From NCBI GenBank assembly GCA_044892505.1, contig CM097882.1, forward strand, positions 429,598,001-429,662,000: 64,000 bases of DNA, given 5' to 3'. The notes beneath the pieces were generated by a model. That model did not search any database. It was given only the letters and a program-made list of their open reading frames with translations, and was not told the origin of the DNA. Both the position numbers and the translations under genes were made by a program. Shown here in pieces: positions 22,073 through 63,559 of this stretch. Position 1 is the stretch's first letter; every line of letters starts with the position of its first letter. Source of the stretch: Schmidtea nova (taxonomy: Eukaryota).

Positions 22073-22241
22073 ACAGCGTAAGACCTTTTATCGGCAGCGT
22101 GAACCTGGCGAGGAAATTTAATGGGGAGTAGTTGTAGCAGTAGAGTTTATCTGCCCATCATTTTTCCGCCACGTGCGCATTACCAACCCTGTTAATTAGG
22201 GAATAACTAGGGGCACAAGAGTGATAGTGTCGTTTTTATGT
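22073..22241 (+). ncRNA. Structured RNA family 1, copy C4
   Basis: GTAAGACC..TATCGGCAGC..GAACC; GGAAA..ATGGG/CCCAT..TTTCC; ATTACCAA, TAGGGAA loop, GGG. Confidence 0.7.
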
Positions 22242-25888: not shown

Positions 25889-26063
25889 CTGATGGTGGTC
25901 CACCTAGTCGTTGTACCGCCATTAGTCATTTTGGTGAATTATCAGCACGTTGAAGTCCTTTCAACGTGCTGATCCATATTTTCATCGAAGTGGGCGCACA
26001 CATCCAATCTCGCTTCATCTCATGCCTGGCTATGTGAGGAGTGGTGGTTTGGCCAAGCGCAAG
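25889..26063 (+). ncRNA. Structured RNA motif family 2, copy 1
   Basis: Stem CTGATGGTGG/CCGCCATTAG; perfect 14-bp hairpin at 25941-25973; loops TCCA..CGTTGT and ACATCCA shared with 36121-36283. Confidence 0.55.
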
Positions 26064-27127
26064 TTTTGTTCAAAATAAAATTATCTATATTATATTATCA
26101 TAGTTATTTTTATTTATATATAAAATCTGACTCATAAATATAAAAATATTGAATGCTAAAAGATGCTAGCAAACATGCAATGTTCGTGATTTCACCTTCG
26201 TCCTAATCAATGCTTTTCGTCTCGCTCACCCATGAACTCGCAAATCATCTGAAAATCTCCACCGAAAATTCGTATTGTTGACAATTATAAAAGAAAATAA
26301 TTGCTCCGATATATTAGAAGATATGAAGAAAAGTTAAATTGCAGTTGAACCTCATTCTATCTGAAAGTGTTTAAAAAGTATAAAATTTATTTTATTCCTA
26401 AACTTAATTTCGGTTATGCGAAGCCTTCAGGCGAAGTGTAACGAAAAATTTGAGTGCACTTTGCTTGAAGAATTCGCATACGAATGAAATTTAGCTAGTA
26501 AAGATCCTATCTTCAAAATATTAATACCTAAAAAGTATTGGAATTAGAATAAGTTATGAAAGAAAATTTTCGTTGTTTAGGAATTTTTATATTTTATAAA
26601 TTTTTATTGAATTATTTTATTTTAGCATTTTATTGTTGGGCAAAAACTGCAAAGCAGTAACCCTATAAGTAGAGAGCGCGCAAGATTCAATTTTAACCCA
26701 AACATTCATTAAAGACCGAAGCGATTAATTGAAAAACGCCAAAAAGGTGAAATGGACTCAAGCACATCAACCAGTAGAGAACGCGCTAGCTGTGAATTTG
26801 CAAGTCCTTACACTGAAACCTCAAGAAAAATTAAAAGTCGTCAAAAGAAGAACGTTTGAAAGTTAGAATAGGCAGAAACCCCATTGAAAATGCCCATAAA
26901 GAACAGAATTGTGTCATAAAACTTCAGTGCAGAAAAAATTAACAAAAATTTTAGAAGAAAATTGTGATTTTATCATGAAATTTCACAAAAAAATAAAAAG
27001 AAACAATCTTGATCGAAATATCGCAAATTAAATCAAATTGAATAAATTTTGATTCAAAAATAAAAATTTTGGATTAAAAATAAATTATTTATGGTTTATA
27101 AAAATTATTAAGTAAAAATATTGATTT

Positions 27128-28188
27128 TGTTCGTCTGTGTGCGCAGTACTTTAATTTTGGAAGAGAGAATATTTTGTAGTCTGTGTGCGCGTTGACATTT
27201 TTTGTTATTTTTGATTGCCGGTATCGCGTCTGTGTGCGCCTCACGGTTTTTTTTTGTTTATCGCGTCTGTGTGCGCGTGGGTAATTTTGGTTGTGGTTTT
27301 TGTGAAATTGATTTAATTTTTAGATTTGGTTATTAATTGAATTTCAAAAAAAAAATCCAGTTGTTTAAATATTCCAATAATTGAAAGTTGGGATTTGTTT
27401 TAAAAAGGTGTTAATGGAAGGAATTTTTGGAAGCTTCGATTTAGAATTTATGGATCAAATTATGGCAATGGATAGGTCGACAAGAAAGGCTAAAGATGAT
27501 CATTCAATACAGAATAATAATGATAATAACGCTACGCATATGCAAGGAAGTTCAGAGAATCATTACAATTATTTCAATGACAGCAATAGGGATGTTATGT
27601 CGATGAATATTGATGCTAATTATGCTAATTTCAATATGCCAATGAACATGAATGCAGATTACAGGCCAGATGGATTCGCTAAAGCCTTGTTAGTTACTCC
27701 CAAGCAGGTGGCTGTCAATGCTGCCTTGGATTCTACTAAAATGATTTCTAAATTGCGTGCTTTGCATCATTCTAGCCAACAATTTCCGGATCTAGCATAT
27801 TTCAAATGGTATGGATTAGATTTGACTAACTTCAATGTGCCAAATGACAAAGAAGCTGGAATTTTCGAATCTTCAATGTCGAAAATTAGATCCGATCTTT
27901 CTCATATATCGAGTGATCACATAAACAATATTTCTCGCAAATCAACTGACAACAAGTCCTTAGAAACAATCTCTATCATATATCAGGTGATAAATCTTCT
28001 GATTTCGGTCATTTCGGTCAACAATGAATTGACAAACAAACATTCTCCGTTTGTGCCATCTTTGGACATACTCCGGCGATTGACGGCACAAATGTTGACT
28101 TACTGTGCATTACACGAGTTGAATGGAATTATCAATACTGTTTATTGTGTGAATAAAGATAATATGGACGTTCAATTAATGATTTCCA
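27128..28188 (+). repeat. BEL 5' LTR (1061 bp)
   Basis: Direct repeat of 34382-35441; four GTCTGTGTGCGC motifs in the first 150 bp; AATAAA at 28152. Confidence 0.97.
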
Positions 28189-31100
28189 ATGGTAGCAGAG
28201 CGTGGTTCCCACTGGGGGGCCACGCACACTTTGGAAGTCTGAGAGGAATCCTGTTAGTGTATATTTTTATTAAAAAGCCTAATATGTTTTGCGTAAATTT
28301 TTATAAATGTTTTAAATTTGTAATTGGGGTATGGACCAACATTCCCTCCCAAGCGCGTTTGAAAAGGGAAGTGAAGGTTGGAATGCTTTGGCTACCGGAT
28401 ATTGTGAAAGACGGCTGCTATGGGCCCCAGCATTCTTTTAAATTCCGGGAAAAAATGGTGTCACCTGCTTATGAAGCAACATGTATAGTAAAAGATAATT
28501 CGGTATTTAAAGGTGTAAATGTTAGTAGGTGCATTGGTTATGACAGCGAAGATTTTTCTTTGAATATCAGCCGGGAAATGTTGCAACAAGATAAAATGTT
28601 GAAAGGCTTAGAACCTTTTGTAGGAATAAAGGGAGATAAAAGTAATCATAAAAAGTTCTATAATCAAATTGTTAAAAATATTAAATTGGGTAATCATGAA
28701 AACAGGGCGAATATGAATAAAATAGGGGAATTATTGAGTTTTTATTCAATAGCAAGTGGTGATGAAAAGACAAGTTTAAAGAATAATAGTTCGCGAGTGA
28801 AAGAAAAGAAAATGGAGTCAACTTTACCTTTTGTTTTGCGATTGAGACGTGGAATACAGATTTTTGTTAAGACTCTAACAGGTAAAACCATAACACTGGA
28901 AGTTGAACCGAGGGACTCTATTGAGAAAATAAAAGCAAGGATCCAAGAGAAAGAGGGAATCCCGCCTGATCAACAGAGATTGATATTTGCAGGTAAACAA
29001 TTGGTAGGCGAAAGAATCCTGTCAGACTACCACATTCTAAAGGGGTCTACTATTCATCTGGCACTGAGATTGTGTGGAGGGAATGATGAAGAGGAGGAAT
29101 TAGAGGAAGGATTGAGAAAGAAGAGGAGTGTCAAATATAGATTGACGAAATTAAGAAACAGATGGATAAATGATATGTTGGCAGAAAATGCAACACATGT
29201 CCTTGATGAATATCAGGAAGCTATGGAAAGTGCCATAGAGAGTTTTGAAAGATTGGTGGATATTAGTAAAAGATTAGGAAGGGCAGATACAACATCGGGG
29301 CTAGAAGCGGATTTACAAGAGATAGAAAATAAGAACGAGAAGGTGGAAGAGTTGATTTCGTCAAAGGCCAATCAGTCTGTTAGGTCGGATGACAGTAATA
29401 CAATTAAAGAGGTAAATGGAAACGAAACGAAGAAAAGACTAGAAAAGATGCAGAAGATACGGATCCAGATATTTGATGGACACCAGAAAGAATATGAAAG
29501 TTGGAAAGCTGCTTTCCATACTTGTGTTGATAGTGCCCATGGAGATGATGATGAAAAGATGTTACACCTTCGATCCTATCTGAAAGGTGAACCGCTAAGG
29601 CTGATCGAAAATTTAGGATTTTCTGCAACGGGTTATAAAATGGCAAAAGAAAAGCTTGATAAAAGATATGGCGGGGAAGAACGAAATTACTTAGCTGCTC
29701 TGGAAGATATCGACAGGTTCCGACCCGTTCGGGAGAATGAAATGCTGGAAATAGAGGCATTTGTTGGACTATTGGAAACGCTAGAAGTTAGAATTATTAA
29801 TAATAGACGAGAGGGCGAAATGAACAACAGTTACTTATTGAAGAGATGCCTGCAAAAGCTACCCAGCTCGCTGCTATACAAGTGGAAGAAAGATTTTAAG
29901 GAGGGAAAGGTAACCGAATGTATCCAAGATTTGAGAAATTGGTTACAAGATGAAGTCGAGCTGTTAAGATCCACAAGAGAAACCCTTTATGGAGTCGGTG
30001 ATGGCAATAGAAGAAACGATTGGAAGAGGCAGGATGGACCGTCAAGAGAATTTGGGAATCTAAGGCAAGGGAACCGGACACTTGTTGGGCAAGTAGCAGA
30101 TTGGAAGGAAGACAAGACAAACATACCAAGAGACGGATTGTTGAGCACAAAGTTGAAGTGTTGGAAATGCAAGGAAAATCATTACTTGGATCAATGCAGA
30201 GAATTCAAAGAAATGAACCCCGCAATGCGGCGTAAAGCAGTAGGAGACTGGAAGTTATGCTTTAATTGTTTAAAGTCTAATCATGTAGCGTCGGAATGTC
30301 GAAAGGCTTCATTCTGTACTAGAGAGGGGTGTAAGTTGAAACACAGTAACCTACTGCATGTGGATCAGTCAGAGTCCAAAAGGAAGGAAAACACATTGAT
30401 GTCGGCTACTAAAGATGAATTATTAAAAAAGGAGCGAAAATACCTAAGCTTGAGGACCATACCGATCTACCTTGAGCATGGAGCGAAGAAAATTAAAGTA
30501 AATGCGCTGTTAGACGATGCAAGCTCCATTAGCTACATAAGTCAGAGTATTGCAGACGAGTTGGGTCTAAAGGGGAAAGAGGAAATAGTTCCTGTGAGCG
30601 TCATCGGAGGTCATATTCAAAATATGACAACAAGAATAGTCACGATGACGTTGATAAGTCATGATCAGAAGATGAGGAAAAAGTTTACAGCTGCAGCGGT
30701 GAAGAGTGTAACCGGGGAAATGCGAGTGATAAATTGGGCAAAGGAAAAATGGCAATGGGAGCACTTAAAGGATATTCGATTTCCAATGCTTGACGAACGA
30801 CAGGTTGTGCATGTTCTTATCGGAGCCGATTATTTAGGGTTGCAAAGAGCGTTGAAGGAAGTGGATGGGAAGATGGACGAACCAATCGCTAGATTAACTC
30901 CGCTTGGTTGGACCTGTGTAGGTGGAAATACGTTGGGCGTGTCATTGACCCACCAAACCAACTTTGTTCAAACGTATTTATCCAAGGACGAGGAGTTAGT
31001 TGGACAGGTAAAGTTGTTCTGGGAAATCGAGAACTTAAAGGAGAACCCGGCGCTCTTGACCAAAAGGGATCGTGAAGTTATTAAAATTACGGAAGAAAAG

Positions 31101-31349
31101 ATGGTTAACAGAGGAATGTTTTATCAAGTGAGTTTACCGTGGAAATCTGGAAAAGAAGAATTATCAAATAATACGCAAATGGCAATGAAACGCCTAGAAA
31201 GTTTAAAGCAAAAATTAGATAAAGATCAAGAGCTGAAGAAGGAATATGAAAGAATTTTGAAGGATCATGAAAGTAAGGATTACATTAGGAGGTTAAGCGA
31301 ACAAGAAAAGGTGGGAACGAAGTGGATGTTACCTCATTTTCCCATTTAA
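27414..31349 (+). CDS. LTR-encoded unknown domain + ubiquitin-like domain + Gag + protease
   Basis: One open frame from ATG 27414. Gag [16 protein letters not shown]; knuckles [42 protein letters not shown]; protease [12 protein letters not shown]. Confidence 0.85.
28190..28207 (+). promoter_or_regulatory. Primer-binding site, initiator tRNA-Met type
   Basis: TGGTAGCAGAGCGTGGTT, 1 nt after the LTR; complementary to an ...CTCTGCTACCA 3' end. Confidence 0.85.
28854..29081 (+). other. Ubiquitin-like domain inside the BEL polyprotein
   Basis: [19 protein letters not shown]...LRLCGG; 59/76 identical to canonical ubiquitin by manual count. Preceded by [13 protein letters not shown], the tail of a previous ubiquitin unit. 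Confidence 0.95.
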
Positions 31350-34345
31350 GAAAGGAAAAAGAAATATCGAAAGTCCGGATTGTATTTGATGCTGCAGCAA
31401 AATGTAATGGAAAGTGTTTGAATGATGTTTTGGAAACGGGACCGAAATTGCAAAATGATCTTTTCGAAATTTTGTTAAGATTCAGACGGTTTAAGGTAGC
31501 CATAGTAAGCGATATCGCCGAAATGTATCTACAAATAAGAGTAGCGGAAGAAGACAGACCTTACTTACGATTTTTGTGGAAAGAGGGTGAGAAGAGTGTG
31601 CAATTTGAATTTTCAAGACTAGTTTTCGGGTTGAATACGTCCCCGTTTCTTGCACAATATGTAACCCAACAACACGCGAGAAGATATGAAAAAAGTTACG
31701 CAAGAGCGGCTGAGACCATAATAAAATCTACATACATGGATGACAGCATTGACTCAGTAGAGACGGAGGAAGAAGCGCTAATTCTTAAAGAGGATCTGAA
31801 GTTACTGTGGGCAGAAGCAGGAATGAGGGCAAGAAAGTGGATGTCAAACTTGATTAAAGTAATGGAAACAATTCCGATCGAAGAACAAGCCAAGTCGTTA
31901 ACAATAGAAGAAAATAGAACAGTCACGATGAAGACATTTGGGATGTACTGGCTCGCAACGGACGATTTATTGAGATTTGAAGGACGAACGGCAGACAATG
32001 TGAAAATCACGAAAAGAATGTTATTAAGTTGGATAGCACGTATCTTTGATCCTTTGGGAATGCTTAGTGCATTCACAATTATTGGCAAATGCCTAATGCA
32101 AGAAGCGTGGATGATGGGAAGTAAGTGGGATGATGTTTTACCCCCAGAATTACAAAAAAGAGCGAGATGTTGGATGGAAGAATGTGAATTATTGAATCGA
32201 GTAATGATTCCAAGGAGATTATTGGGGAAGCAAAGCAACCCGTGGCGCTTACATGTATTTGTTGATGCGTCTAGTACTGCCTATGCAGCGGTTTGTTACC
32301 TTAGGGAAGAAGAGAGCGCCAAGGTTAAAATGAAATTTGTTGCGGCACGAGCAAAAGTAGCTCCAGTTAAAGTAATTAGCATTCCACGATTGGAATTGAT
32401 GGGCGCCTGTTTGGGTCTAAAGTTAGCTAAGAAAGTTGGAAAGGCGTTACAATATGAATTGAAAAATGTCATGTTTTGGACTGATAGTCAAGATACCTTG
32501 CACTGGATTCGTCATCATTCAAGACTATGGAAAACATTTGTTGCCAACCGAGTGAGTACCATTCAGAACGAGACAGATGCTGAACAATGGCGTTACGTTC
32601 CTACTAAGAGCAACCCAGCAGATATAGCCACTCGGGGAATGTCGGCATCAGATCATATAGGAGATAATATGTGGTGGGAAGGACCACCTTTTTTAAAACA
32701 CTTTGAAAGAAATTGGCCAAAAACGAAATTAGATATACAGGTAAATGAAAATAGAGAAAGAAAGCAAGCGACATTTGTCATAAATTTAGAAGAAGAGCAA
32801 CCTGGAAAATATCAAGTAAACTGTTGGCAACCTGAAACCTATTCAGCGTGGAAAAGATTGCTCAGAGTAAGAGCATGGGTGCATAGATTCGCAAATAATT
32901 GTCGAAACAAAAAGGAACTCCGAAGTGGGGAGTTAACAACCGACGAAATCAAAAAGATTGAAACGATAGTAATTCGAGAGGAGCAAAATGAGATCTTTAA
33001 GGATGAGATACGAGAGTTAAAAGACGGAAGACCATTGTATAAAAAGAGCAAAATACTGAGTTTGAATCCAATGCTCGATGAAGAAGGATTACTCAGGAGT
33101 AACAGTCGAATCATAAATGCAGAGTTCATGACATTAGAAGCAAGATACCCGATAATATTAAGTGCAAAACGATGGGTGACTAGACTGATAATAAGAAAAT
33201 ATCATCAAGACAGAGATCACTGCGCCGGAACAAATCATTTATTAAGCGATCTGCAGGAAAGGTTTTGGATAACGCAACCTAAAAGAGAAATCAAGAAGGT
33301 GGAATTTGAATGCCTAATCTGTAAAAAGAGACGAGCTTCTGGACGGTCCCAGAAGATGGCTCCACTACCTGCATTTCGATTGACGGAACCATTTAGACCA
33401 TTTGGAAAAGTGGGGGTTGATTTTGCGGGCCCATTCTTAACAATCCAGGGCCGAGGAAAAGCGAGGCTAAAGAGATATGTGTGTTTGTTTACATGTTTAC
33501 AAACTAGAGCAGTGCATCTGGAATTAGTGTACGGACTAACAACGGATTCATTCATACAAGCTTTAATAAGATTCATTGGGCGACGAGGAAAACCAGTGTT
33601 GATGTTATCAGACAACGGTACTAATTTCGTGGGAGCAACGGGGGAATTGAAAGATGTGATACTCGATGGTTATAAGATAACGAAGGAGTTGACAGCTCGG
33701 GAGATAAGATGGGTGTTTAATCCGCCAGCCGGGCCACATTTCGGAGGGGTTTATGAAGCGTTAATAAAATCGATGAAAAGAGCTGTGTCAGCAATAGTGG
33801 GTAATGCGGATATTACAGATGAAGAGATGCTGACAGTAGTAGCACGGATTGAAGGATTTTTGAATGCCAGACCGTTGACGACAAAAGGGGATGATGAAAA
33901 AGGACTTGAAGTACTGACACCTAACCATTTTTTAATACCCAGATGGTCAGAAATCGAGGCTAATGAAATAGAAACTAATAAGAAAATTAATATTCAGCGA
34001 CGATGGAAAAGGACGGTAGAGTTAACCAATCAAGTATGGAATAGATGGAAAAGAGAACTTGTGCCGATATGGATAAGCAGAGCCAAGTGGAGATCAGATC
34101 AAGAAGAGTTAATAACAGGTCAGTTAGTGTGGATTTTAGATAAAGAAAGCGAAAGTGTTGGAGAATGGCCATTGGGGAAGATCACAGAGTTAATGATGGG
34201 AAGCGATGGACGGACACGGGTAGTAAAGATGTGGAGTAAAGGGAAAGAGGTGATCCGTCCAATATCTCAGCTTTGCCCCTTGGAAGTAGAAGCAGAGAAG
34301 CAAGAAAATTTTAAAGAAAAAAAGGGGTTGGCGGAAAAGGAGTAA
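31322..34345 (+). CDS. BEL Pol: RT, RNase H, integrase (-1 frame relative to the upstream ORF)
   Basis: [68 protein letters not shown]. Confidence 0.95.
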
Positions 34346-34368
34346 ACAAGGAGAGTTGACGAGGAGTC

Positions 34369-34381
34369 AAAAGGGGGGGAA
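34369..34381 (+). promoter_or_regulatory. Polypurine tract
   Basis: Purine run immediately before the TG of the 3' LTR. Confidence 0.9.
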
Positions 34382-35441
34382 TGTTCGTCTGTGTGCGCAG
34401 TACTTTAATTTTGGAAGAGAGAATATTTTGTAGTCTGTGTGCGCGTTGACATTTTTTGTTATTTTTGATTGCCGGTATCGCGTCTGTGTGCGCCTCACGG
34501 TTTTTTTTGTTTATCGCGTCTGTGTGCGCGTGGGTAATTTTGGTTGTGGTTTTTGTGAAATTGATTTAATTTTTAGATTTGGTTATTAATTGAATTTCAA
34601 AAAAAAAATCCAGTTGTTTAAATATTCCAATAATTGAAAGTTGGGATTTGTTTTAAAAAGGTGTTAATGGAAGGAATTTTTGGAAGCTTCGATTTAGAAT
34701 TTATGGATCAAATTATGGCAATGGATAGGTCGACAAGAAAGGCTAAAGATGATCATTCAATACAGAATAATAATGATAATAACGCTACGCATATGCAAGG
34801 AAGTTCAGAGAATCATTACAATTATTTCAATGACAGCAATAGGGATGTTATGTCGATGAATATTGATGCTAATTATGCTAATTTCAATATGCCAATGAAC
34901 ATGAATGCAGATTACAGGCCAGATGGATTCGCTAAAGCCTTGTTAGTTACTCCCAAGCAGGTGGCTGTCAATGCTGCCTTGGATTCTACTAAAATGATTT
35001 CTAAATTGCGTGCTTTGCATCATTCTAGCCAACAATTTCCGGATCTAGCATATTTCAAATGGTATGGATTAGATTTGACTAACTTCAATGTGCCAAATGA
35101 CAAAGAAGCTGGAATTTTCGAATCTTCAATGTCGAAAATTAGATCCGATCTTTCTCATATATCGAGTGATCACATAAACAATATTTCTCGCAAATCAACT
35201 GACAACAAGTCCTTAGAAACAATCTCTATCATATATCAGGTGATAAATCTTCTGATTTCGGTCAATTCGGTCAACAATGAATTGACAAACAAACATTCTC
35301 CGTTTGTGCCATCTTTGGACATACTCCGGCGATTGACGGCACAAATGTTGACTTACTGTGCATTACACGAGTTGAATGGAATTATCAATACTGTTTATTG
35401 TGTAAATAAAGATAATATGGACGTTCAATTAATGATTTCCA
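34382..35441 (+). repeat. BEL 3' LTR (1060 bp) with the same open frame (ATG 34667, stop at 35467 in flanking DNA)
   Basis: Direct repeat of the 5' LTR. Confidence 0.97.
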
Positions 35442-36120
35442 GATTTAATTCGGCGAAAAATTATTAGAATTAATTTCGAGAAATTAAAAAGAATATTCTA
35501 GAACAATTTGTTTTACTGCATTAGTTATGGTAACGCAAAATCGATGGTATATATACCGCCATCAAAATGGCAAGAATCAGAATTTTTGTGGAAATTTTTC
35601 TTGTGGTGGAATTTGTGTGAGAATTTTTCTAAGAATTTCAGAAAATTTTGTGTCGGAGCTTTTGTCTCAAAATCTTTGTGAAAGAATTGAATTTCAGAGA
35701 ATTTTGTGTAGAAGAATTTGTGAAAGAATTTGGTGAAATTTTGCGAGAGAATTTTCCTACGAATTTTCTAAGAATTTTTTTTTGAATTGCGCAGATTGGA
35801 GAAAATTCCTGAAGAAAGTAATAAAAACGATGTAAGAATTTTTTGTTATTTTTTTTTTGGCTTGGGATCATCGATCATCATGCCTGACGATTATCCCATG
35901 CCTCGCGTTTTGTTTATATTATTTTATTCTAATTTATTTATTTTATTCTTGATGATAAGGTATAATTGTATTATTCTTTTATATGGGGAAAAATATTAAT
36001 CATATTTTAATTGATTTTGTTTTTAATTTTTGTCTTTGTCACAAATTTCCCAATTAAATAAAATCCTATTTTAATATATATATCTAAGTAAAAATAAAAA
36101 TTTTTTTTTCTCCACACAAT

Positions 36121-36283
36121 CTGACAATTCGTCCAGCCTCGCGTTGTGCGGATTTGTTAGTAGCCTGGGTGGATTATTGTCCGATTGGTAATCGGCCAGC
36201 CCATTTGTCCTCCTTAAGGTGAGGCTCAAACATCCATAATCACGTCATCCCAACTGGGGAATCGTGGTATGGCCAAAAGCAAG
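36121..36283 (+). ncRNA. Structured RNA motif family 2, copy 2
   Basis: Stem CTGACAATTC/GGATTTGTTAG; CCGATT-GGTA-ATCGG (GNRA); loops shared with copy 1. Confidence 0.55.
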
Positions 36284-39200
36284 AGTTTTTATATTAATGA
36301 TTTTTATTATAGTATAGTAGAGTATTTATACTATATTACATAAGTTAATCGTAATATATAACATCAATTCGTCCAGCTCATGCCTTGAAATCTAAAATAA
36401 GCATTATCTTACTAAATAAAATCGACTCGCATTCACCTTCGTCTTCACAAAAATTTCTTCTCATCCTTTTGGAATCCAGTATATGTGAAATTAGAAATCA
36501 TGAAAAAATGCTCAATCGAAAACTATTTATTAAATAATGAACTGTGTAAAGAAGTGACGAATTATTAATGTAAAGATTATGATTTTATGTGAATTTTAGG
36601 TAAAGAACTCGAGCTGGTGGAAAATTTTTTCGAAGAATATTATTAAAAAATTTTAGTCTTATATGAATTTTTATCTTATTTAATTGATGAAAAATTTAAT
36701 TTTTTTACATTGAGTTTTGTGTATTATTATACTGGATCTTAGCATGGAATTGCTCCTTTGATTTTGTATAAAATTTATACATGATAAAGTATAAAATGGG
36801 ATTATATAGTTTAGAAAATAAAGTCAACAACTGAAAAAGATCTGTAAAAGGAATTAATAAAATTTAAAATTCAAAATTTCAATATTATAAAAATAAAAAT
36901 TTTATAACTTTGACAGAAACATAAATTCGAAATATTATAAAATTATTATTATAATCAAATATAAAAATTTATCTCATCTATTAATTCCATAATACAAATT
37001 AAGGGAAAAATTCTAATTCTACATATATATTTATATACTTATAATATAAAAAATTCAAACTTAGAATTTTATTATAAAATTTTTATTAAAATGTTATATA
37101 ATTATAAATTACAAAAATTATTATTATTATTTTAAGTTAGAAATCATAAAAATTTATTATTATTATTTTTAGAAATTATTTTATATATTATATCTATATT
37201 ACTTATAAAATACCCCCCTAATATCACATACAACCATGTTTGTGAAACAATTCACCCATACCATTCAATAACATCATCCATACTAATAACACAAGCAACA
37301 TCTATTTAAAATACAATACACACACCACACCGTATCACTCAATAACATTCATTAGCAACATACACCCAAACAATTCATACAGAAAATCTACACAGTTACG
37401 TTAGTTAGTACCATACATCTATAACTCACACAGCACTCACTTAATTACATCCACATCCACACCGCTTATTTCATCCAACAGACAAATAAACATACCATCA
37501 CATACATTCGCAACAATAGAACATTTATTTCAAAGCTATAAGAATATCCATACACACTAATTCGCAAATCATCATATCTCAGCAAACCACACCACTATAG
37601 AACATTTTCTCTGGGAATCACCTTATAAGGTATATTTTAGCCATTCATAAACACAACCAGACCATCGACTTATCGCCACGTCTCATTTCACGTAGGAAAA
37701 TCCCATCACCCTTATGAGCAATTTCACTACAATCATCAATAACATACTCAGCAAGATATACATAAAATCTTTACACCTAATTGCTGATTAAGTTGATTGT
37801 TTTATCCATTTATACTACCTATGTAGCAGATCATATCCAGGAAATGCCTATGGATTTCTATTTATCTATACTCTGAATTAGGTTTAACCGTTTCACTTAA
37901 TGATCTCCTGTAACCTTAACTACCTTATTTATGCTGGACAACGCCCATTAAAATACATTATATTCTATAATTCATTATTTCAGTCATTTAGCCCTTTTGA
38001 CCCAGCTATCGTATTCTAGATAATAAACTAACGAAACAATGCTGGTAAAGAAAATGAGAAACATATATTACCCTCAACGACGATTCACCAAAAGTTTTGC
38101 AAAATTAATAATAAATTTGTATAATTAAAACTTAGCCAAATCATTATGCAAAAGTTTCTACTAATAACCATAAAAAGAAATTGAAAATAAAAATTCACAA
38201 CACTTACCAACAATCAAACATGAACGCACAAAAATTTTATTTATAGCTATAATAACAACAATAAGATTTGCATAGTGTTGATATTGATTAAAATGCGAAA
38301 GAGGAGAGAGACCAGTGGCAGAGTAAATTTGTATGATTATGCTCATTGTGGGTGAAAAATCCCAAAATCGTCTCAGAAGTCAGCGATAGACGAGATCCCA
38401 AGACTAGATCAGTATTGTTGTCGGATGCAATTTTCTTTTGAAAAAGATGATGTTTGACTAATTCCAAGAAGAGCTGACGATTTGAACAGCAGAAAATTTG
38501 AACAAATTCCGTTAGGCTTATACACTAAAACGAAAATAAGAAAATATCACAAATAAATCAATTAATTTACCATAAATATTGTTCCAGCATCCATAAAAAC
38601 ACTAAATCGTTGCAATTGTCTGAAATGCAGGGAAATCCCCATACTAAAATTAGATATCTAAAATCAATAATCTTAGTATATAAATTAAATTGCCATAAAA
38701 TAATCTAACCAATAGAAATCTGTTATTTTTTGATTGCACATCTATATAGTTTCTGTTGAAGTTCCATTATCTTCATCAAAACCAAAGGGGGGTCGCTTAA
38801 ATTAAAATCGATAATATAATTTTAAAAATCGATAGTTAAGGGAGATCTCACATGGATGAAACTTAAAAAATTTAAGGAAATCATTTAGATACTGTCACTA
38901 ATGCCTCAGTGAGAATTTAAATGTAAATTTATTAGAAATTTTAAAATAAAATTTATAAAATTTTGATAAGAATAGCAAGATAGACATTAGGTATAGGGGA
39001 TAAATAGAGTTTAACTAAATTTACTGACACTAAAATATACAAATTTAAAAAAATCTGAAAAATAATAAAGTTTAGTTAAAATCAACAGAAAATCAAATAC
39101 CCCGAACATACGTGTTAATAAAAGATTATTCGATTCCCGAATTGAAATTTGTTGAGACTCGCTATCGAAATATGTAAAAACCCCCTTAACTTGCTGTAAT

Positions 39201-39302
39201 GACGAATGAATTAATTGATTTTGATGTATAATGATAATTTTTGTAATTGTTGTACATTAACCATCCTTGATATGTCTCAAAAACGTTTAAACATTTTTAG
39301 CA

Positions 39303-39878
39303 ATGAATCCAGTGCAACAGTTAGAGGAAATTCATAAACTGTTGATCGAGAACGCGAAACACAATAAGAAGGTCGACGCACGTTTTGCCGATCTAGAAGC
39401 TAAGGGGTTGCCCAACACAGACGCGCTCCAGCTGATGACCAGTGGAATGGAGAAATTTCGGGCCCGCTGTCGAGAGATGGAAGCGACCTGGTCCGACAAA
39501 GAAACAGTGGACCGGTTAAGAAAACAGAATTAAATGCTCATCCAACAAGCTGCCGAAGACGCAAGGAGATTGCGCGCATTTCGAGTCTCAATGCGAGAGC
39601 AGGAGCTCGTGATTGAGAAATTGAGGGTAGACAGTGGCATCATCTCCGCCATACTACCGAAATCTCAGCCTCCACTCCAGGAATTGTTCCGTGTGAGAGG
39701 GGAGGAAGAAATCGCATCTTCATCAGCAGTTCCAACCAAGCCAAAACTATGGAGGCCCAGTAAAGGGGCCAGAGCCAGGAACAAGCGTTGCCAAGAAGCG
39801 CGAGTGCTAGGCCAGTTAAGAGTGGAGGCCTCGAAAATCATTAATTTTGACATTGATTTAACAAGTCCACGCATATGA
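39303..39878 (+). pseudogene. Coiled-coil ORF with basic C-terminus (191 codons, one in-frame TAA at 39531); probable distant ORF2
   Basis: Two track ORFs abut in frame. Length, architecture and position before the RNA motif match ORF2; sequence similarity is weak. Confidence 0.55.
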
Positions 39879-40076
39879 TTTGATATTGTATTAAATGTTG
39901 TAATATGATTATAAGTTTTCTCTTATATTGTTTCTACTATTTGTTTGTTTGAACAAGGACAGATAAAAATAAGAGATTTAATAAGTTAAATAATTAATAA
40001 ATAAACAACGGTTTGGTGAAAATATTCAAATGGAGACCTTGTATTGGAAATCCAAAGCGATAGAGCGTTTGATTTA

Positions 40077-40245
40077 AAGGGACTAAAGGGGCATTAAACC
40101 TTCTATCGGTAGCCCTTGGACCCAGGAGATATTCGGTCAATCATAGTTTCGTATTGACGACGCTCACTGATTGCGAATACCCACCCATTTGTTGCATTAC
40201 CAACGTTACCTAGTGACGGGCAACTAGATGGTTATTTCAATGTTT
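40077..40245 (+). ncRNA. Structured RNA family 1, copy C5
   Basis: All conserved blocks present. Confidence 0.75.
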
Positions 40246-41305
40246 TGTATGTTGAGTTGTTGATACGAGATTTTATTTTTACTTACAACACGAAAATAGA
40301 TGAAAATTATTTCTGATTCCAAATGAAATAACCACTTGAAACAATAGTCCAGATATCATAGCAGAATAACTTATAAAATTTCCAATTGTCAGGGCAAATT
40401 CCAACGAGAGAATCAATGAATTCTAAAGTTATAACGTAAAAGGCTGGATAATTTAATCTTATCCCACTTACGATCTTGCTTGTCGAACGGCCCATATCGA
40501 GAGCTTCTTTGAAGGGCTGGCATCCAAAACTAGTATCTAAATCATGAATGAAATATCTTAAAGGAGTAAAACTAAATCAACTTACCAATAAATTCAGTTG
40601 AAATTAGGGGGAATCCCATTCTAAAAATATAAAAATAATCAATAATTATAATATACAAAATCAAATTCGTATAATATAAATTAGCCAATAGGAATCCGCC
40701 AATTTTTCAGTGGCGTTTATATAGCTTTCTTCTTTTTCGGGGGAACGCCGATGATTTTGATGGGAACGCGATCAAGATCGGATTTCCTAGTTTGAGTTTT
40801 GACCTAAAATTTGGAAATAAACATAAAATTCGAAAATTTGAGAAATACCGATGTTAAATTATTTGGAGAATTTATATTGTTGCTGTTGCTAAGGCCTCGG
40901 CAAATTTTTGAAAATTAAAAATTAAAGTTTTAACAAGATTTTAATTGTATATATAAAGCAAGATAGACAATAGGATTAAAATACAAATTAGGTTTATCTA
41001 AATCTTCAATATGGAAAACACAAAAATAGTTGTACAATCTTGAATATAGTAGTAAATTTGATAAAATTAACAGTGATTGAAAATCCCCGAATATATGCAT
41101 TTTTACAGGAATATTCAATCCCCGAATTGAGTTGCGATGATATGCTTGAGCACGAGCTTACGAATAAAAATGGATGCACGAAAACTCCTGTGTTTTGAGA
41201 TAATACCGTGTATAATGGCTGATTGCGAGAAATTAATAAATTTTTATCGATGAAATTATTTCATTTTGCTAATTTAAAAGAGATAACTACAGTTAAATTG
41301 TTAAG

Positions 41306-41541
41306 AAGGGACAAAATGGGCATTAAACCTTCTATCGGTAGCCCTTGGCCCAGGAGATATTCGGTCAATCATAGTTTCGAATTTTCGACGCTCACTGATT
41401 GCGAATACCCACCCATTTGTTGCATTACCAACGTTACATTGTGACGGGCAACAAGATGGTTAATTCTAATGTTTTATGTGTTGAGTTGTTGATGAGAGCC
41501 ATAGTAACGTCAAGGTCATATTGACGATCAACAACCAACCA
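41306..41541 (+). ncRNA. Structured RNA family 1, copy C6, plus terminal hairpin
   Basis: All conserved blocks, then GTTGTTGA...GTCAA/TTGAC...TCAACAAC. Confidence 0.75.
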
Positions 41542-55422: not shown

Positions 55423-55661
55423 AAGGCTCTCAAATGGGCATTAGACCTTCTATCGGTAGCCCTTGAACCCATTGAGATGTTCTATCAATCATATTTTCGA
55501 TTTTTCAACGCTCACTGTTTGCGGACATTCACCCATTTGTTGCATTACCAACGTTACATTGTGACGGGCAACAAAATGGTTTAATTTAATGTTTTATATG
55601 TTGAGTTGTTGATGTGAGCCATAACAACGTCAATGTCATGTTGACTGTCAACAACCCACTA
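55423..55661 (+). ncRNA. Structured RNA family 1, copy C7, plus terminal hairpin
   Basis: All blocks present; 9-bp closing stem GGCATTAGA/TTTAATGTT with G-U pairs. Confidence 0.75.
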
Positions 55662-60155: not shown

Positions 60156-60522
60156 TTACTGTTGGGCCAGCCAAATAGAGGGAAAAGTGAAATAAAAGTA
60201 GAATAATTAAAACAAAAAGAGAAAAATAAGGTAAAAAGGGGAATATTAATTTGTTAAAAGAAAAGAGTAATATAGTTAAAATATAGATAAATTAAGAACA
60301 AACTATAAATAAAAATAAATGAATTTCTAGATATTAACGGGCCCAGGAGACATCTAAAAACAAACAAAATACAAATAATAATAATTAAAACCAAATAAAA
60401 GTACTTGTTATTGAATAATTGTTTTTGAAACCCGGACTTCCAAGGAAGAATACAATCTAAAAAATAAAAATTAATTAGAATCAAAAACAATAATTAAAAC
60501 CACCATGAAATCGGCCAAATCC

Positions 60523-60568
60523 GATTGGTCAGTCTAGATCAGACTGATCAGTATAAATACTGATCAGA
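60523..60568 (+). promoter_or_regulatory. Unit H core promoter: GATTGG and TATAAATA, the TATA inside the palindrome CTGATCAGTA-TAAA-TACTGATCAG
   Basis: Direct reading; similar position to the promoters of B and D. Confidence 0.65.
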
Positions 60569-61506
60569 CTTTGGATAAAACAGACTTAATACCTAATCTT
60601 ACAACGTCAGTTGAGAGTGTAAAATTTAGCTCACTAATCAAATAGACTTTAAATTCTAGACGAACCGATCGAATCAAACCCAGACGAATTAGGTATTTTG
60701 GTTTCTGTATTATTTTATTCATGATTGTGTCATTTGTTTTGTCATTTATCTATTGATCTAATTATTTATGTGTTTATGCGTTCATGTGTCGAAATTTGTT
60801 ATATGAATTATATAAATTAAACGTTATTGTGATTAGACTCAACATTAAAATATATAATGATCATATTAATTTTGCGCCGTTGGGAGCTTTAGGTTCCCAA
60901 GGTGTCAGTCCGTGGCGTGGTGCTCGAGGGCTCCACACACGGTAAAGTAATAAATAACCAAATATGATTTTATTAGTAGTGGTCGAGATTTGCACATGGG
61001 ACACCCAACAAATCCGGGGAATTATTTTCCGATCATTTTAACTACAGAGGAGGCGATTTTCGGATAAAGTCTAACGATGTAGGATAAGAAAGAATTTTTC
61101 GACTGTGAGGAGGCACAATTTTTCACCCTCACCACAGCACAGTTGCTAAATAAACATCTAATAAACCTTAGAAAATTAGGTCGACCGCATTTGATATGAA
61201 AGGGGCGTTTTCCGAGTAAGCTAGGAGATATATGACGTGAGAGAGTTTCCGTTTTGGGATACCAATGTTTCGATATCCACGCAGACAAAACACCAATTTT
61301 CGACTATATTATTGATCGTAAACGAATAAATCTAAGCAGACACGAGAGTAAGGTACACCGTAACGAGCAACAGTTTTTCTTGATTTCAGTTAAGGTCTAA
61401 GGAGAAGACAAATAATAAAGGCATCACGATGAGAGATAACATCTACTATAATTAATCATTGATTTAAATTGTTAACTATTATAAAATTCAGCATCATTCT
61501 AGTATC

Positions 61507-61983
61507 ATGACTAAACACAGATTCACCATCAAAAAGCGACGAGAACGAGCCCGAATTAGCCCATTAAAGCCGGCTCCTTTTGAAATTTTGCAACAAATCC
61601 ATCAAAAAATGTGGGCATGGCGCCGAGAGCTTGTAACCGCATGTCCATTTACAGTATGGGACCATCCACGGCATCACGTATGGTACCGGGGATGCGCTAG
61701 TTGGCCAATCATTCCAGACGAGGAATTCGAATCATGGCACGCCGCCTGGTTCGTTCTGATGTTGGATAAGCGGGGATTCCCGAACTGTGTAATTTATTGG
61801 GGGTTCATTCCAGCCTCTACATTCAAGGAATTGGGATTCACTTTCCATACAGCAATACGACCCCTTCGGGAAGCTGAGAGGATCCGTCTCCAGCAAGCCT
61901 CACCCAACTCCACTGGAATCAGCTCAAATTTGCAAATCAGATCGATATTTTCGTACCGAGGAAAAATGACCGAAGATGAATAG
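61507..61983 (+). CDS. ORF1, 158 aa, Trp-rich, function unknown
   Basis: Open frame followed by AATAAA; homologues in units B and D. Confidence 0.75.
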   Translation: MTKHRFTIKKRRERARISPLKPAPFEILQQIHQKMWAWRRELVTACPFTVWDHPRHHVWYRGCASWPIIPDEEFESWHAAWFVLMLDKRGFPNCVIYWGFIPASTFKELGFTFHTAIRPLREAERIRLQQASPNSTGISSNLQIRSIFSYRGKMTEDE

Positions 61984-62318
61984 TTGAATAAATGGCCACC
62001 TGTTTTGAATTAAATAAATGTTTTAGAGGAATCTGAAGTGTTGCATTTTGTTAATAGCGCTATAATGTAGATGAGAAATTTATTAACCTCTAGTGCTGTA
62101 GATGTTACCGTCAGTAGGACATTCTTTCACTAATGTAAAACAGTTGAGCAAAATTTTGAGCCTCCAATCATTAAATAGAAAAATAATTTTGGTGTAAAGA
62201 TTTAATACTTGAACACAGTAGTATGCATTTTTGCTCCTAAATCGTAAATAGTCACTTAATTAAAATGACCTTGTTGATAGGTTCTCCAGCGAATTTATCG
62301 TTATAATATTCAGACATC

Positions 62319-62903
62319 ATGCCGATTTCAGAAAACTCGAAGAGAATCATGGGACAAATCCAAGATAGAAAGTTGAGGGACCAGCAGAGGCAGATCAAGC
62401 GACTCACGGTAGCAAATGATGAACTGAGAGCGAAGTGGTTCTCACCCGAGCAAATGAAGGGTCAATCGCAAAAACTCGAGCGAATGCAGGAAGCACTGGC
62501 CGCAACTAAATTAGAGCTTGACGCCGTCCAGAGAGAACTACGAAATTGCCTGAATGCAGTAACAAGAAGTTATATCGACTCCGAATTACGAGCGCTAATC
62601 CGGCCGATCACGGCTCAGCGCTGGACACAAAGTACTTATCAAGATGTCGCTTGCGGGACGGAAGATGGTATCATCATGGCCCCCACTCTTGTAACGGACG
62701 AATTGCCTACTTTTCACAGTGATCCATCGAGAACAATTGCGTCAGCACTTGTCCTAAACCCACAGCTTCGAAAACACCGAATGGGATCGCGACAGCGTCG
62801 GCGTCGCCGAGAATTTGCGAAGCGCCTGGACGAGCAAATCCACCACTTAAACTCCTTAACCGAAGCAGAGTTGATTCAGGAGATTAGTCTGGAGTTTGCG
62901 TAG
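62319..62903 (+). CDS. ORF2, 194 aa, coiled coil with Arg-rich C-terminal motif, function unknown
   Basis: Open frame followed by AATAAA at about 62946; homologues at 12554, 21350, 48902 and possibly 39303. Confidence 0.8.
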   Translation: MPISENSKRIMGQIQDRKLRDQQRQIKRLTVANDELRAKWFSPEQMKGQSQKLERMQEALAATKLELDAVQRELRNCLNAVTRSYIDSELRALIRPITAQRWTQSTYQDVACGTEDGIIMAPTLVTDELPTFHSDPSRTIASALVLNPQLRKHRMGSRQRRRRREFAKRLDEQIHHLNSLTEAELIQEISLEFA

Positions 62904-63188
62904 GAAAACATCAATGTCAAATAACAACCTGTTTTTATTATTTTAATAAAAGTGTTTTTGTGTAAATTTTGTCTCTCATCGTACGAGTTCACTAAATAAA
63001 ATAAAACAACATAAGTAATTCGTAGAAATAAAAAAATCGCGTCATAAAACCTACACCGACCGTTACTTAGCAGCGAGAGCTTTCGTAGGCTCGTAGAACA
63101 GCGAAGGAGAGTGTCATTGGGAAAAGCGTGTGATGGATCCTAAGGAGATGTAGTATAAGATTCAGTGGGCGACCATCCATAGAATGTA

Positions 63189-63357
63189 AATGCGTAAGAC
63201 CTTCTATCGGCAGCAAGGACCCGAGGGAAGATAAATGGGGAGTAGTTTTGGCAACAAAGCTCACCTGCCCATCATTTTTCCACCACCGTATGCAGTACCA
63301 ACTTGACTAGTAGGGAATAGTCAAGGGCATACGCGTGTAGTAGTCATGTTATGTATG
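63189..63357 (+). ncRNA. Structured RNA family 1, copy C8
   Basis: AGTTTTG-GCAA-CAAAGCT (GNRA); CGTATGC/GCATACG; CTTGACTA/TAGTCAAG; TACCAA/GGG. Confidence 0.75.
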
Positions 63358-63559
63358 GTTATGGGCGTGGAATCCCTAGTATACGTACTCATCAATAGTC
63401 GTTCAATTAATGATTAACTATTTATTTGAATTACTTAAAACCCAACCATAATCCCAGCATTACTATGCCACCTGCCAGGATCGAGCAAGAGTGGTATAGT
63501 AAAGATGGTTTGTAAAAATAGATTTATTTTCTCAAGTTACTTATCCGACCAAAGCTTTC

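What the first reader, a model, noticed from the sequence alone, without database searches (positions are those of the whole stretch)
60160..63459. Family of giant solo-LTR-like units carrying their own two-gene cassette and a structured RNA
Seen: units B (12083-15655, minus), D (20369-22307) and H (60160-63459) start TGTTGGG, end CC(C)A(G/A)CA and have exact 4-bp TSDs (GTAC, GTTA, TTAC). All share the order CCAAT+TATA promoter, ORF1, ORF2, structured RNA, end. Protein motifs are conserved across strongly diverged DNA. A fourth unit (24535...41541, TSD ATAT, about 3.4 kb net) shares the termini and the RNA. No RT, integrase or transposase is visible. Established: TG...CA ends with 4-bp TSDs are the signature of Gypsy-type integrases and of Ginger transposons. 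Known LTR-overlapping genes (MMTV sag, HIV nef) lie in U3, upstream of the TATA box. Inference: these are either solo LTRs of a Gypsy lineage with protein genes in R/U5, or pol-less cassettes mobilised in trans by an integrase. I cannot match either to a described system.
Basis: partly seen in the sequence, partly recalled or inferred. Interest (0 to 1): 0.92.

Follow-up and report, generated by a model that had tools for sequence, protein, structure and literature searches.

The report
Gene-carrying giant solo LTRs in planarian
The 3.3-kb unit is most likely a solitary long terminal repeat left by a giant Gypsy-type retroelement of a planarian flatworm, unusual because the repeat carries two selected protein genes and a conserved folded RNA element.

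Summary
H (60160-63459), D (20369-22307) and B (12083-15655, minus) begin TGTTGGG, end CCCAGCA or CCAACA, and have exact 4-bp duplications. All three share the order A-rich head, GATTGG-27/29 nt-TATA promoter, ORF1, ORF2, AATAAA, 165-nt folded module, end. Between H and D, pN is about 0.32 and pS 0.84-0.89, so both ORFs evolved under purifying selection. The module occurs eight times in the window. It shows compensatory changes in 15 of 28 pairs, and no Rfam family matches it.

The host is a dugesiid planarian: an ATG12 ORF is 94% identical to Dugesia japonica. These genomes are known for giant Gypsy "Burro" elements with multi-kb LTRs and accessory ORFs.

Best reading (0.7): solo LTRs of such a lineage, with the ORFs in R and the module in U5. 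A single unit transcribed from its internal TATA cannot regenerate its own first 400 bp, which argues against independent retro-mobilisation.

No full-length parent could be examined, because the source genome is absent from every reachable collection. ORF1 and ORF2 have no detectable homologues. I rate this a new variant of a known kind, of moderate interest. The fourth unit (24535..41541) is composite and only partly confirmed.

The parts
60160..63459 (+). Unit H, the complete LTR-like unit (3300 bp) with both ORFs intact
   Evidence: Ends TGTTGGG...CCCAGCA. Colinear with D from base 1. No internal terminal direct repeats.
60156..60159 (.). Left copy of the 4-bp target-site duplication TTAC (right copy at 63460-63463)
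60160..60522 (+). A-rich U3-like head of H
   Evidence: Aligns with D bases 1-401 at 61%. B has the same A-rich head.
60523..60559 (+). Conserved promoter grammar: GATTGG (inverted CCAAT box), then TATAAATA 29 nt downstream
   Evidence: The same pair is spaced 28 nt in D and 27 nt in B. Promoter function is inferred, not shown.
60560..61506 (+). Long leader of H, absent from D and not alignable with B's 1.4-kb leader
61507..61983 (+). ORF1, 158 aa, intact; Trp/Cys-rich with no known domain
   Evidence: pN 0.325 against pS 0.841 versus D. The AlphaFold model is unusable, pLDDT 37.6.
62319..62903 (+). ORF2, 194 aa, intact: long N-terminal helices, disordered linker, C-terminal arginine-rich helix
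   Evidence: pN 0.32 against pS 0.894 versus D.
62945..63032 (+). Cluster of poly(A)-signal hexamers between ORF2 and the folded module
   Evidence: Every copy has such hexamers 49-241 nt upstream of the module and none downstream of it. This is weak evidence in AT-rich DNA, where AATAAA occurs 2.5 times per kb per strand.
63186..63349 (+). Conserved folded module (about 165 nt), sense strand, placed in the U5-like tail
   Evidence: MFE -49.2 kcal/mol, z-score -2.42. No Rfam family.
63350..63459 (+). 3' terminal segment of H, ending CCCAGCA
20369..22307 (+). Unit D (1939 bp, TSD GTTA), a degraded relative of H with the same order of parts
20875..21201 (+). D ORF1 remnant, broken by one large 5' deletion, at least one frameshift and two in-frame stops
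21355..21888 (+). D ORF2 remnant, broken by at least three in-frame stops
22070..22235 (+). Folded module of D
   Evidence: 133.8 bits
12083..15655 (-). Unit B (3573 bp, TSD GTAC), a distant family member inserted into a fragment of an ordinary small LTR
13350..13850 (-). B ORF1, 166 aa, intact; 27-29% identical to H ORF1 with shared motifs
12600..12955 (-). B ORF2 remnant (approximate bounds), broken by in-frame stops (one inside the BLAST match, about three by my reading) with no recognisable start
12194..12360 (-). Folded module of B
   Evidence: 127.2 bits
24535..41541 (+). Composite region called the 'fourth unit': LTR-type start at 24535, LTR-type end at 41541, ATAT on both flanks. It holds a nested BEL/Pao element, a second start at 26634 and two modules.
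39303..39878 (+). ORF2-like reading frame of the inner U4-family copy (about 190 codons, one in-frame stop): helical N-terminus and arginine-rich C-terminal part
   Evidence: Only marginal positional similarity to H ORF2 (E = 0.037 in a single comparison).
41314..41480 (+). Folded module of the U4-family copy that ends at 41541
   Evidence: 162.3 bits
40085..40251 (+). Second U4-family module; this copy is truncated just after it
55432..55600 (+). Module of another U4-family copy that ends at 55659; no long ORFs and no matching duplication found
586..755 (+). Module of a U4-family copy that ends at 821 and is cut by the window start
16012..16159 (+). Partial, degraded module
   Evidence: 34.7 bits
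16184..17042 (.). Ordinary-size (859 bp) LTR-like unit with the same terminal heptamers (TGTTGGG...CCCAACA), TSD ATAT, A-rich head, CCAAT + TATA, and AATAAA about 95 bp from the end

Best explanation
H, D and B are solitary LTRs. They are left after LTR-LTR recombination of a lineage of giant Ty3/Gypsy-type retroelements of a dugesiid planarian, of the kind published as Burro.

Proposed layout of the LTR:
- U3: an A-rich segment of about 400 bp ending in a GATTGG/TATA promoter.
- R: very long, about 2.4 kb in H. It carries a leader and two accessory genes (ORF1, ORF2), followed by poly(A) hexamers.
- U5: about 0.5 kb, whose core is a conserved folded element.

In a full-length element most transcripts from the LTR promoter would end after ORF2 and give a short accessory-gene mRNA. 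Read-through transcripts would be the genomic RNA. The folded module would then lie just upstream of the primer-binding site, where elements that guide priming of reverse transcription, dimerisation or packaging are normally found.

A solo LTR keeps promoter, genes and poly(A) signal, so it can remain a stand-alone transcription unit. ORF2 has a coiled-coil part plus an arginine-rich helix, so it is most plausibly a multimerising nucleic-acid-binding regulator.

Shown: the ends, the duplications, the shared order of parts, purifying selection on the ORFs, covariation in the module, and the planarian host.

Inferred: LTR status, the U3/R/U5 assignment, Gypsy/Burro affiliation, and the functions of both ORFs and the module.
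For: - LTR-type termini and exact 4-bp duplications in three units whose bounds are set by homology.
- No internal terminal repeats and no RT, integrase or transposase in the units.
- Promoter grammar conserved with 27-29 nt spacing in three copies whose other non-coding DNA is barely alignable or not alignable.
- Poly(A) hexamers upstream of the module in all seven full copies and never downstream of it.
- An ordinary 859-bp LTR-like unit with the same terminal heptamers, TSD length and layout lies in the same window.
- pN 0.32 against pS 0.84-0.89 for both ORFs.
- Module statistics: 86% of cells paired against 30-41% when slid, 15 pairs with double changes, 22 G-U pairs on the sense strand against 7 on the antisense. 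A hairpin that displays an almost invariant (one substitution in H) 9-nt internal loop is kept by different stems in both families.
- The host is a dugesiid planarian: an ATG12 ORF is 94% identical to Dugesia japonica.
- Published planarian Burro elements have internal regions up to 25 kb and total lengths above 30 kb. That implies LTRs of several kb. They also carry accessory ORFs (PMC6431247; PMC11410931).
- Coding sequence inside a bona fide paired LTR is seen directly in this window. The gag fusion ORF of the BEL/Pao element starts about 250 bp inside its 1061-bp LTR.
- Mechanistic argument from established reverse-transcription logic: an RNA started at the internal TATA lacks the first 400 bp. 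A single unit therefore cannot regenerate itself. Two LTRs can.
Against: - No paired copy, primer-binding site, polypurine tract or gag-pol next to any of the eight copies in the window.
- The sequences flanking the different copies are unrelated.
- No sequence of a Burro LTR or of any other planarian genome could be reached, so the affiliation is circumstantial.
- An R region of about 2.4 kb would be exceptional and needs the 5' poly(A) site to be bypassed.
- TSS and poly(A) sites are unverified.
- 4-bp duplications do not discriminate Gypsy from some BEL/Pao elements.
Confidence: 0.7

Rival explanations
1. The units are independent pol-less cassettes moved as DNA, cut and pasted by an integrase-like DDE transposase of the Ginger type or by a retroelement integrase acting in trans. 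They were never part of a two-LTR element.
For: - All copies in the window are solitary, and three have perfect duplications.
- Each unit is a self-contained promoter-genes-poly(A) cassette.
Against: - The terminal inverted repeat is only 6 of 7 nt and no longer inverted termini exist. Ginger elements have TIRs of tens to hundreds of bp (knowledge).
- No matching transposase in the window.
- An ordinary small LTR with U3-R-U5 layout shares the same termini.
- Solo LTRs are the expected majority form when LTRs are several kb long.
- The conserved sense-strand RNA structure fits an RNA-based life cycle.
Confidence: 0.12
2. They are solo LTRs, but of another LTR superfamily (BEL/Pao or Copia) or of a non-Burro Gypsy family. 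'Giant Burro-type' is then the wrong label.
For: - BEL/Pao elements are present and young in this window.
- TG...CA ends are common to all LTR superfamilies.
- Burro affiliation was never tested by sequence.
Against: - The BEL/Pao element here makes a 5-bp duplication and has unrelated LTRs of 1061 bp.
- LTRs of 3.3-3.6 kb match what is published for planarian giant Gypsy elements.
Confidence: 0.12
3. The ORFs and the 'RNA' are not functional parts. The units are ordinary LTRs inflated by junk or old nested insertions, and the reading frames are chance.
For: - No homologue of ORF1 or ORF2 in 1.84 billion representatives, Pfam, PDB or PHROGs.
- D and B carry broken copies.
- One family member ending at 55659 has no long ORFs.
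Against: - pN is about 0.32 against a saturated pS of 0.84-0.89 in both ORFs.
- The ORFs and the module are the best-conserved DNA blocks between H and D, above the 61% of the U3 head (71-74%; 63-74% under the more sensitive scoring).
- The covariation statistics of the module.
Confidence: 0.05

Closest known systems
Burro / GYPSM1 giant Ty3/Gypsy retroelements of dugesiid planarians (Grohme et al. 2018; Arkhipova & Yushenova 2019, PMC6431247)
   Same: Same host group. LTRs of several kb are implied by the published sizes. These elements are reported to acquire accessory ORFs and host-derived domains, and they are present in thousands of copies.
   Different: The papers I could read describe accessory ORFs in the internal region or inside the polyprotein. 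They describe no two-gene cassette inside the LTR and no conserved folded LTR element. Sequence relationship was not testable here.
Ogre LTR retrotransposons of plants
   Same: Very long LTRs (1.9-6.5 kb) and extra ORFs of unknown function (PMC6431247).
   Different: Ogre's extra ORFs lie in the internal region, not in the LTR, and the host is a plant.
Retroviral genes overlapping the LTR (MMTV sag, HIV nef, foamy virus bel/bet)
   Same: Protein-coding sequence inside an LTR.
   Different: Those genes lie in U3, upstream of the LTR TATA box (established knowledge). Here both ORFs lie downstream of the conserved promoter. No sequence or fold match came back from any search.
Cassandra TRIMs (5S RNA gene in the LTR) and plant retrozymes (hammerhead ribozyme in the LTR)
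   Same: A structured RNA module carried inside an LTR.
   Different: No 5S, hammerhead or any other Rfam family matches. The units have no pair of short LTRs around a non-coding core.
Ginger1/Ginger2 DNA transposons
   Same: TGT... termini and 4-bp duplications; their transposase is related to Gypsy integrase.
   Different: Ginger TIRs are tens to hundreds of bp, whereas here only 6 of 7 nt match. No such transposase was seen in the window.
Rev/Rex/Rec/Rem-type RNA-export adaptors with a structured response element in complex retroviruses
   Same: Resemblance by architecture only. ORF2 is a small helical, probably multimerising protein with an arginine-rich helix, encoded next to a conserved structured RNA of the same element.
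   Different: No search returned any of these proteins. If the poly(A) hexamers are used, the module lies outside the short mRNA. This is a lead, not a result.

Membership tests
Solo LTR of an LTR retrotransposon (Ty3/Gypsy type) | 5'-TG...CA-3' termini forming a short imperfect inverted repeat | tested here: met
   TGTTGGG...CCCAGCA or CCAACA in H, D and B
Solo LTR of an LTR retrotransposon (Ty3/Gypsy type) | Target-site duplication of 4-6 bp flanking the unit | tested here: met
   TTAC, GTTA and GTAC, all exact. Bounds are fixed by homology.
Solo LTR of an LTR retrotransposon (Ty3/Gypsy type) | U3-R-U5 signals: promoter, then poly(A) signal, then a short tail | tested here: inconclusive
   Conserved GATTGG/TATA pair and AATAAA upstream of the tail. 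No transcript-end data are available.
Solo LTR of an LTR retrotransposon (Ty3/Gypsy type) | Related full-length copies: two such units in direct orientation around PBS, gag-pol and PPT | not testable with these tools
   None in the window. The source genome is absent from the protein and contig collections.
Burro giant Gypsy elements | Host in Dugesiidae | tested here: met
   ATG12 ORF at 1778-2053 is 94% identical to Dugesia japonica ATG12
Burro giant Gypsy elements | Sequence similarity to Burro LTRs or internal regions | not testable with these tools
   No Burro sequence is reachable. Only sizes from the literature are available.
Ginger DNA transposon (non-autonomous) | Terminal inverted repeats of tens to hundreds of bp | tested here: not met
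   Only 6 of 7 terminal nt are complementary, and no terminal inverted repeat was found
Ginger DNA transposon (non-autonomous) | TGT... termini and 4-bp duplication | tested here: met
TRIM / LARD / retrozyme (non-autonomous LTR elements) | Two terminal direct repeats around an internal domain | tested here: not met
   No terminal direct repeats within H
Retrozyme | Hammerhead ribozyme in the repeat | tested here: not met
   No Rfam match at gathering or relaxed thresholds
Cassandra-type LTR with a cellular small-RNA gene | 5S rRNA or another known RNA gene in the LTR | tested here: not met
U3-embedded retroviral accessory genes (sag / nef / bel type) | ORF lies in U3, upstream of the LTR TATA box | tested here: not met
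   Both ORFs lie 0.95-2.3 kb downstream of the conserved TATA
U3-embedded retroviral accessory genes (sag / nef / bel type) | Sequence or fold homology to those proteins | tested here: not met
   No hits in Pfam, PDB, BFVD or 1.84 billion representatives
Rev/Rex-like adaptor plus response element | Arginine-rich RNA-binding helix, a multimerisation region, and a structured target RNA in the same transcript | tested here: inconclusive
   ORF2 has helices at 5-108 and an arginine-rich helix at 157-179. The module is real. There is no homology, and co-transcription is unknown.

The most novel reading that the evidence does not exclude
The LTRs of a planarian giant-retroelement lineage are complete genes in their own right. 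Every LTR, including each of many solo LTRs, would express two lineage-specific proteins from the LTR promoter. One of them (ORF2) would be a multimerising arginine-rich RNA-binding protein that recognises the conserved folded U5 module of the genomic RNA. This would be a complex-retrovirus-like regulatory circuit in an invertebrate Gypsy lineage, with solo LTRs as a dispersed reservoir of trans-acting factors.
Probability: 0.2. Interest if true: 0.75.

Novelty: new variant of a known kind. Interest (0 to 1): 0.48.

Why it matters
If these are LTRs, they put conserved, selected protein genes in the R region of an LTR, downstream of the LTR promoter. That layout is not among the described ones: sag, nef and bel sit in U3, and the extra ORFs of Ogre and Burro are internal. 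It would mean that solo LTRs, usually counted as dead remnants or mere enhancers, can remain protein-expressing genes scattered through a planarian genome. That bears on how these giant elements interact with the PIWI system of planarian stem cells. The folded module is a new conserved cis element shared by at least two diverged LTR families, and it gives a handle for annotating them. If instead a curated library already lists these LTRs, the finding shrinks to an annotation detail.

Tried and rejected
Searches for relatives and known families:
- Homologues of ORF1: phmmer against 1.84 billion representatives gave one hit, a repetitive plant-like protein that I judge spurious.
- Homologues of ORF2: the word-indexed search found nothing within 0.55-1.75 times its length. 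Longer fusions were therefore not excluded.
- Pfam, PHROGs and PDB sequence searches found nothing meaningful.
- AlphaFold: the ORF1 model is unusable (pLDDT 37.6). The ORF2 model is helical, and Foldseek against viral structures gave no match below E = 2.5.
- Exact look-ups of window proteins and of the D. japonica ATG12 found no contig.
- The BEL pol search gave at most 53% identity, so the source genome and its close relatives are not in the collection.
- Pattern scans for the module in viral and metagenome contigs gave only chance matches when re-scored with model R1.
- Protein-guided scans of viral contigs found nothing.
- Rfam at gathering and relaxed thresholds found nothing.

Ideas rejected:
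- A second promoter just upstream of the module, which would put the ORFs in U3. H has an ATTGG/TATAAG pair there, but D, B and the U4 family do not.
- The fourth unit as a full two-LTR element. Its two ends share no LTR-length similarity.
- The gag-protease fragment at 44381-42833 (minus) as the parent. No link to the units was seen.

Grohme et al. 2018 could not be opened.

- I also noted the coordinates of one in-frame stop and the frame offsets of one frameshift.
- None of these was used as evidence or sent to a tool, and none is repeated here.
Full report
**What is there.** The window is AT-rich (24-42% GC) and is a patchwork of nested mobile elements. Unit H runs from 60160 to 63459. It starts TGTTGGG, ends CCCAGCA, and is flanked by TTAC on both sides. 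D (20369-22307, flanks GTTA) and B (12083-15655 on the minus strand, flanks GTAC) have the same kind of ends.

H and D align from their very first base and stay colinear through four blocks:
- the A-rich head, bases 1-404 of H against 1-401 of D;
- ORF1;
- ORF2;
- a block near the 3' end.

The unit bounds are therefore set by homology and not by the duplications, so each 4-bp duplication is an independent test with p of about 0.007 at this composition. I checked how weak the motif-plus-duplication criterion is on its own. Among 442 start/end motif pairs, offset controls gave 0-9 matches, and one chance pair appears inside another element. The heptamer TGTTGGG is three times over-represented, 15 against 4.85 expected.

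**Anatomy.** In H, D and B a GATTGG (an inverted CCAAT box) lies 29, 28 and 27 nt upstream of a TATA(A/T)A box, about 350-400 bp from the 5' end. The surrounding DNA is barely alignable.

H then has a 0.95-kb leader, ORF1 (61507-61983, 158 aa), ORF2 (62319-62903, 194 aa), a cluster of AATAAA hexamers, a 165-nt conserved block (63186-63349), and 110 bp to the end.

D lacks about 1.1 kb (the leader and the start of ORF1), and both its ORFs are broken:
- ORF1 has one large deletion, at least one frameshift and two stops.
- ORF2 has at least three stops.

B has an intact ORF1 (166 aa) and a broken ORF2.

H has no terminal direct repeats of its own, and no inverted termini beyond 6 of 7 nt. None of the units contains a reverse transcriptase, integrase or transposase domain.

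**Are the ORFs genes?** H and D proteins are 50% (ORF1) and 46% (ORF2) identical. B is 27-32% identical to H. Each BLAST match was analysed separately:

| Comparison | pN | pS |
|---|---|---|
| ORF1, H vs D | 0.325 | 0.841 |
| ORF2, H vs D | 0.32 | 0.894 |
| ORF2, H vs B | 0.46 | 0.833 |

Synonymous sites are saturated, while replacement sites are held back about 2.6-fold. This is the signature of long purifying selection in the active ancestors, whatever the state of today's copies.

Neither protein has a detectable relative:
- Pfam found nothing.
- The word-indexed search with ORF2 found nothing.
- phmmer of ORF1 against 1.84 billion representatives gave one spurious repetitive hit.
- PDB and PHROGs found nothing.

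The ORF1 model is unusable (pLDDT 37.6). ORF2 is predicted as long helices (residues 5-108), a disordered linker, and C-terminal helices (157-193) that carry an arginine run. Its fold search gave nothing. An ORF2-sized frame with the same layout, and one stop, lies in a copy of a second family (39303-39878). Its similarity to H ORF2 is only marginal (E = 0.037 in a single comparison).

**The folded element.** A covariance model built from seven copies finds them at 127-162 bits, plus one degraded copy at 34.7 bits. It finds nothing comparable elsewhere in the window. The full copies are at 586-755, 12194-12360 (minus), 22070-22235, 40085-40251, 41314-41480, 55432-55600 and 63186-63349.

The element is shared by the H/D/B family and by a second family (the copies ending at 821, 41541 and 55659) whose other DNA is unrelated. 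On the RNAalifold structure:
- 86% of cells pair, against 30-41% when partners are slid by 1-3 columns.
- 15 of 28 pairs change on both sides.
- No shuffle out of 500 reaches the observed values.

The sense strand has 22 G-U pairs against 7 on the antisense strand. This favours the ORF strand, with the caveat that the structure was predicted on that strand.

A 3' hairpin is kept by different stem sequences in the two families. It displays an almost invariant 9-nt internal loop, with one substitution in H. H's copy folds at -49.2 kcal/mol, z = -2.42. No Rfam family matches at gathering or relaxed thresholds.

**Host and context.** An ORF at 1778-2053 is 94% identical to ATG12 of Dugesia japonica, so the window comes from a dugesiid planarian. 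These genomes are more than 70% A/T and rich in LTR/Gypsy elements. They include the giant Burro elements, with internal regions up to 25 kb and total lengths above 30 kb including the LTRs. That implies LTRs of several kb. These elements carry accessory ORFs and host-derived domains (PMC6431247; PMC11410931; PMC8532177).

Two observations in the window fit this picture:
- An ordinary 859-bp LTR-like unit (16184-17042) has the same terminal heptamers, a 4-bp duplication, an A-rich head, CCAAT + TATA, and an AATAAA about 95 bp from its end. It looks like a miniature of H without the genes.
- The young BEL/Pao element nested at 27128-35441 has LTRs of 1061 bp that are 99.7% identical, and a 5-bp duplication. 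Its gag fusion ORF starts about 250 bp inside its LTR. Translated sequence inside an LTR therefore already occurs in a bona fide two-LTR element here.

**Interpretation.** The most economical reading is that H, D and B are solo LTRs of a giant Gypsy-type lineage. They would have a U3 of about 400 bp and an exceptionally long R that holds the two genes. A U5 would hold the folded module. All seven full copies have poly(A) hexamers 49-241 nt upstream of the module and none downstream. At 2.5 AATAAA per kb per strand this is only suggestive.

The alternative of a free-standing cassette copied through RNA fails on logic. A transcript started at the internal TATA lacks the first 400 bp, and a single unit offers no second copy from which reverse transcription could restore them. 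Movement as DNA by a Ginger-type enzyme remains formally possible. It is disfavoured by the 7-nt termini and by the sense-strand RNA structure.

The module's position, just upstream of where the primer-binding site would follow, suggests a role in priming, dimerisation or packaging. ORF2's coiled-coil plus arginine-rich helix suggests a multimerising nucleic-acid-binding regulator. I had Rev, Rex, Rec and Rem in mind, and none came back from any search. These functional assignments are inference.

**What I could not do.** I could not see a full-length parent:
- The eight copies in the window are all solitary, and their flanks are unrelated.
- A Pfam scan of every stop-free piece of 65 aa or more outside the BEL element found no Gypsy-type pol.
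- The only extra retroelement piece is a gag (two zinc knuckles) plus protease fragment at 44381-42833 on the minus strand, with no visible link to the units.
- The source genome and its close relatives are absent from the reachable collections. Exact look-ups failed, and the BEL pol finds nothing above 53% identity.
- Pattern and protein scans of viral and metagenome contigs gave only chance matches.
- Grohme et al. 2018 could not be opened.

**The fourth unit.** The ends at 24535 and 41541 have the right termini and ATAT on both sides. The interior, besides the BEL element, holds a second family start at 26634, a truncated second module (40085-40251) that is 93% identical to the terminal one, an ORF2-like frame, and a separate CCAAT/TATA promoter near 40690-40725. 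It is at least two nested or rearranged family copies. The pairing of the two outer ends rests on one AT-only tetramer (p of about 0.015).

**Verdict.** The second, trans-mobilised cassettes, is unlikely.

The kind is known: solo LTRs of giant planarian Gypsy elements. The variant appears undescribed in what I could read: a selected two-gene cassette in R and a conserved folded U5 module shared by diverged families. Interest is moderate.

Noticed in passing
window 27128-35441: Young BEL/Pao retrotransposon with 1061-bp LTRs that are 99.7% identical and a 5-bp duplication (GATTT). Its 1322-aa gag ORF starts inside the LTR and carries in-frame fragments of TCP-1/cpn60 (encoded within the LTR), HSP90 and ubiquitin ahead of DUF1759 and the protease. 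A BEL protein from a JGI metagenome contig (P0100, locus L049) has the same HSP90-ubiquitin-gag order at 37% identity, so the fusion is old and lineage-wide.
   Followed up: partly
window 1727-2053: Stop-free stretch encoding an ATG12 ubiquitin-like protein, 94% identical to Dugesia japonica ATG12. It lacks the first 15 or so residues, so it is either an exon or a truncated retrocopy. It identifies the host as a dugesiid planarian.
   Followed up: partly
window 2498-3692: Compact Merlin/IS1595-type DNA transposon: an intact 317-aa transposase ORF (2603-3556) between about 80-bp inverted repeats (2498-2576 and 3610-3692, 90% identical).
   Followed up: no
window 8582-10820: Penelope-like element pieces (RT plus GIY-YIG endonuclease) arranged as an 811-bp inverted duplication at 99.5% identity, next to masked N runs. 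A second GIY-YIG-bearing near-palindrome lies at 17044-17949.
   Followed up: no
window 42833-44381 (minus strand): Fragment of another LTR retroelement: gag with two CCHC zinc knuckles followed by a degenerate aspartic protease. It is broken by several stops and frameshifts and truncated on the pol side. The region upstream is occupied by a piggyBac-like element (46460-47167).
   Followed up: partly
window 16184-17042 and 15656-15821: An 859-bp ordinary LTR-like unit with the same terminal heptamers as the giant units and TSD ATAT. A fragment of the same small family lies at 15656-15821 (minus) and appears to be the target into which unit B inserted.
   Followed up: partly
window 63303-63311, 22188-22196, 12240-12248 (minus), 41433-41441, 55553-55561, 710-718, 40205-40213: The module's 9-nt internal loop (A-U/G-UACCAAC), invariant except at that one position (G in H only), resembles the CCAAC(A) motif at the 3' termini of the LTR units themselves. 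This may be coincidence or a shared recognition motif; it is unexplained.
   Followed up: no
window 11126-11995 and 4787-5451: Arrays of 30-, 76- and 120-bp tandem repeats, with an inverted, 76-99% similar copy on the other side of the masked region. They look like the long subterminal repeats of a large DNA transposon or a foldback element.
   Followed up: no
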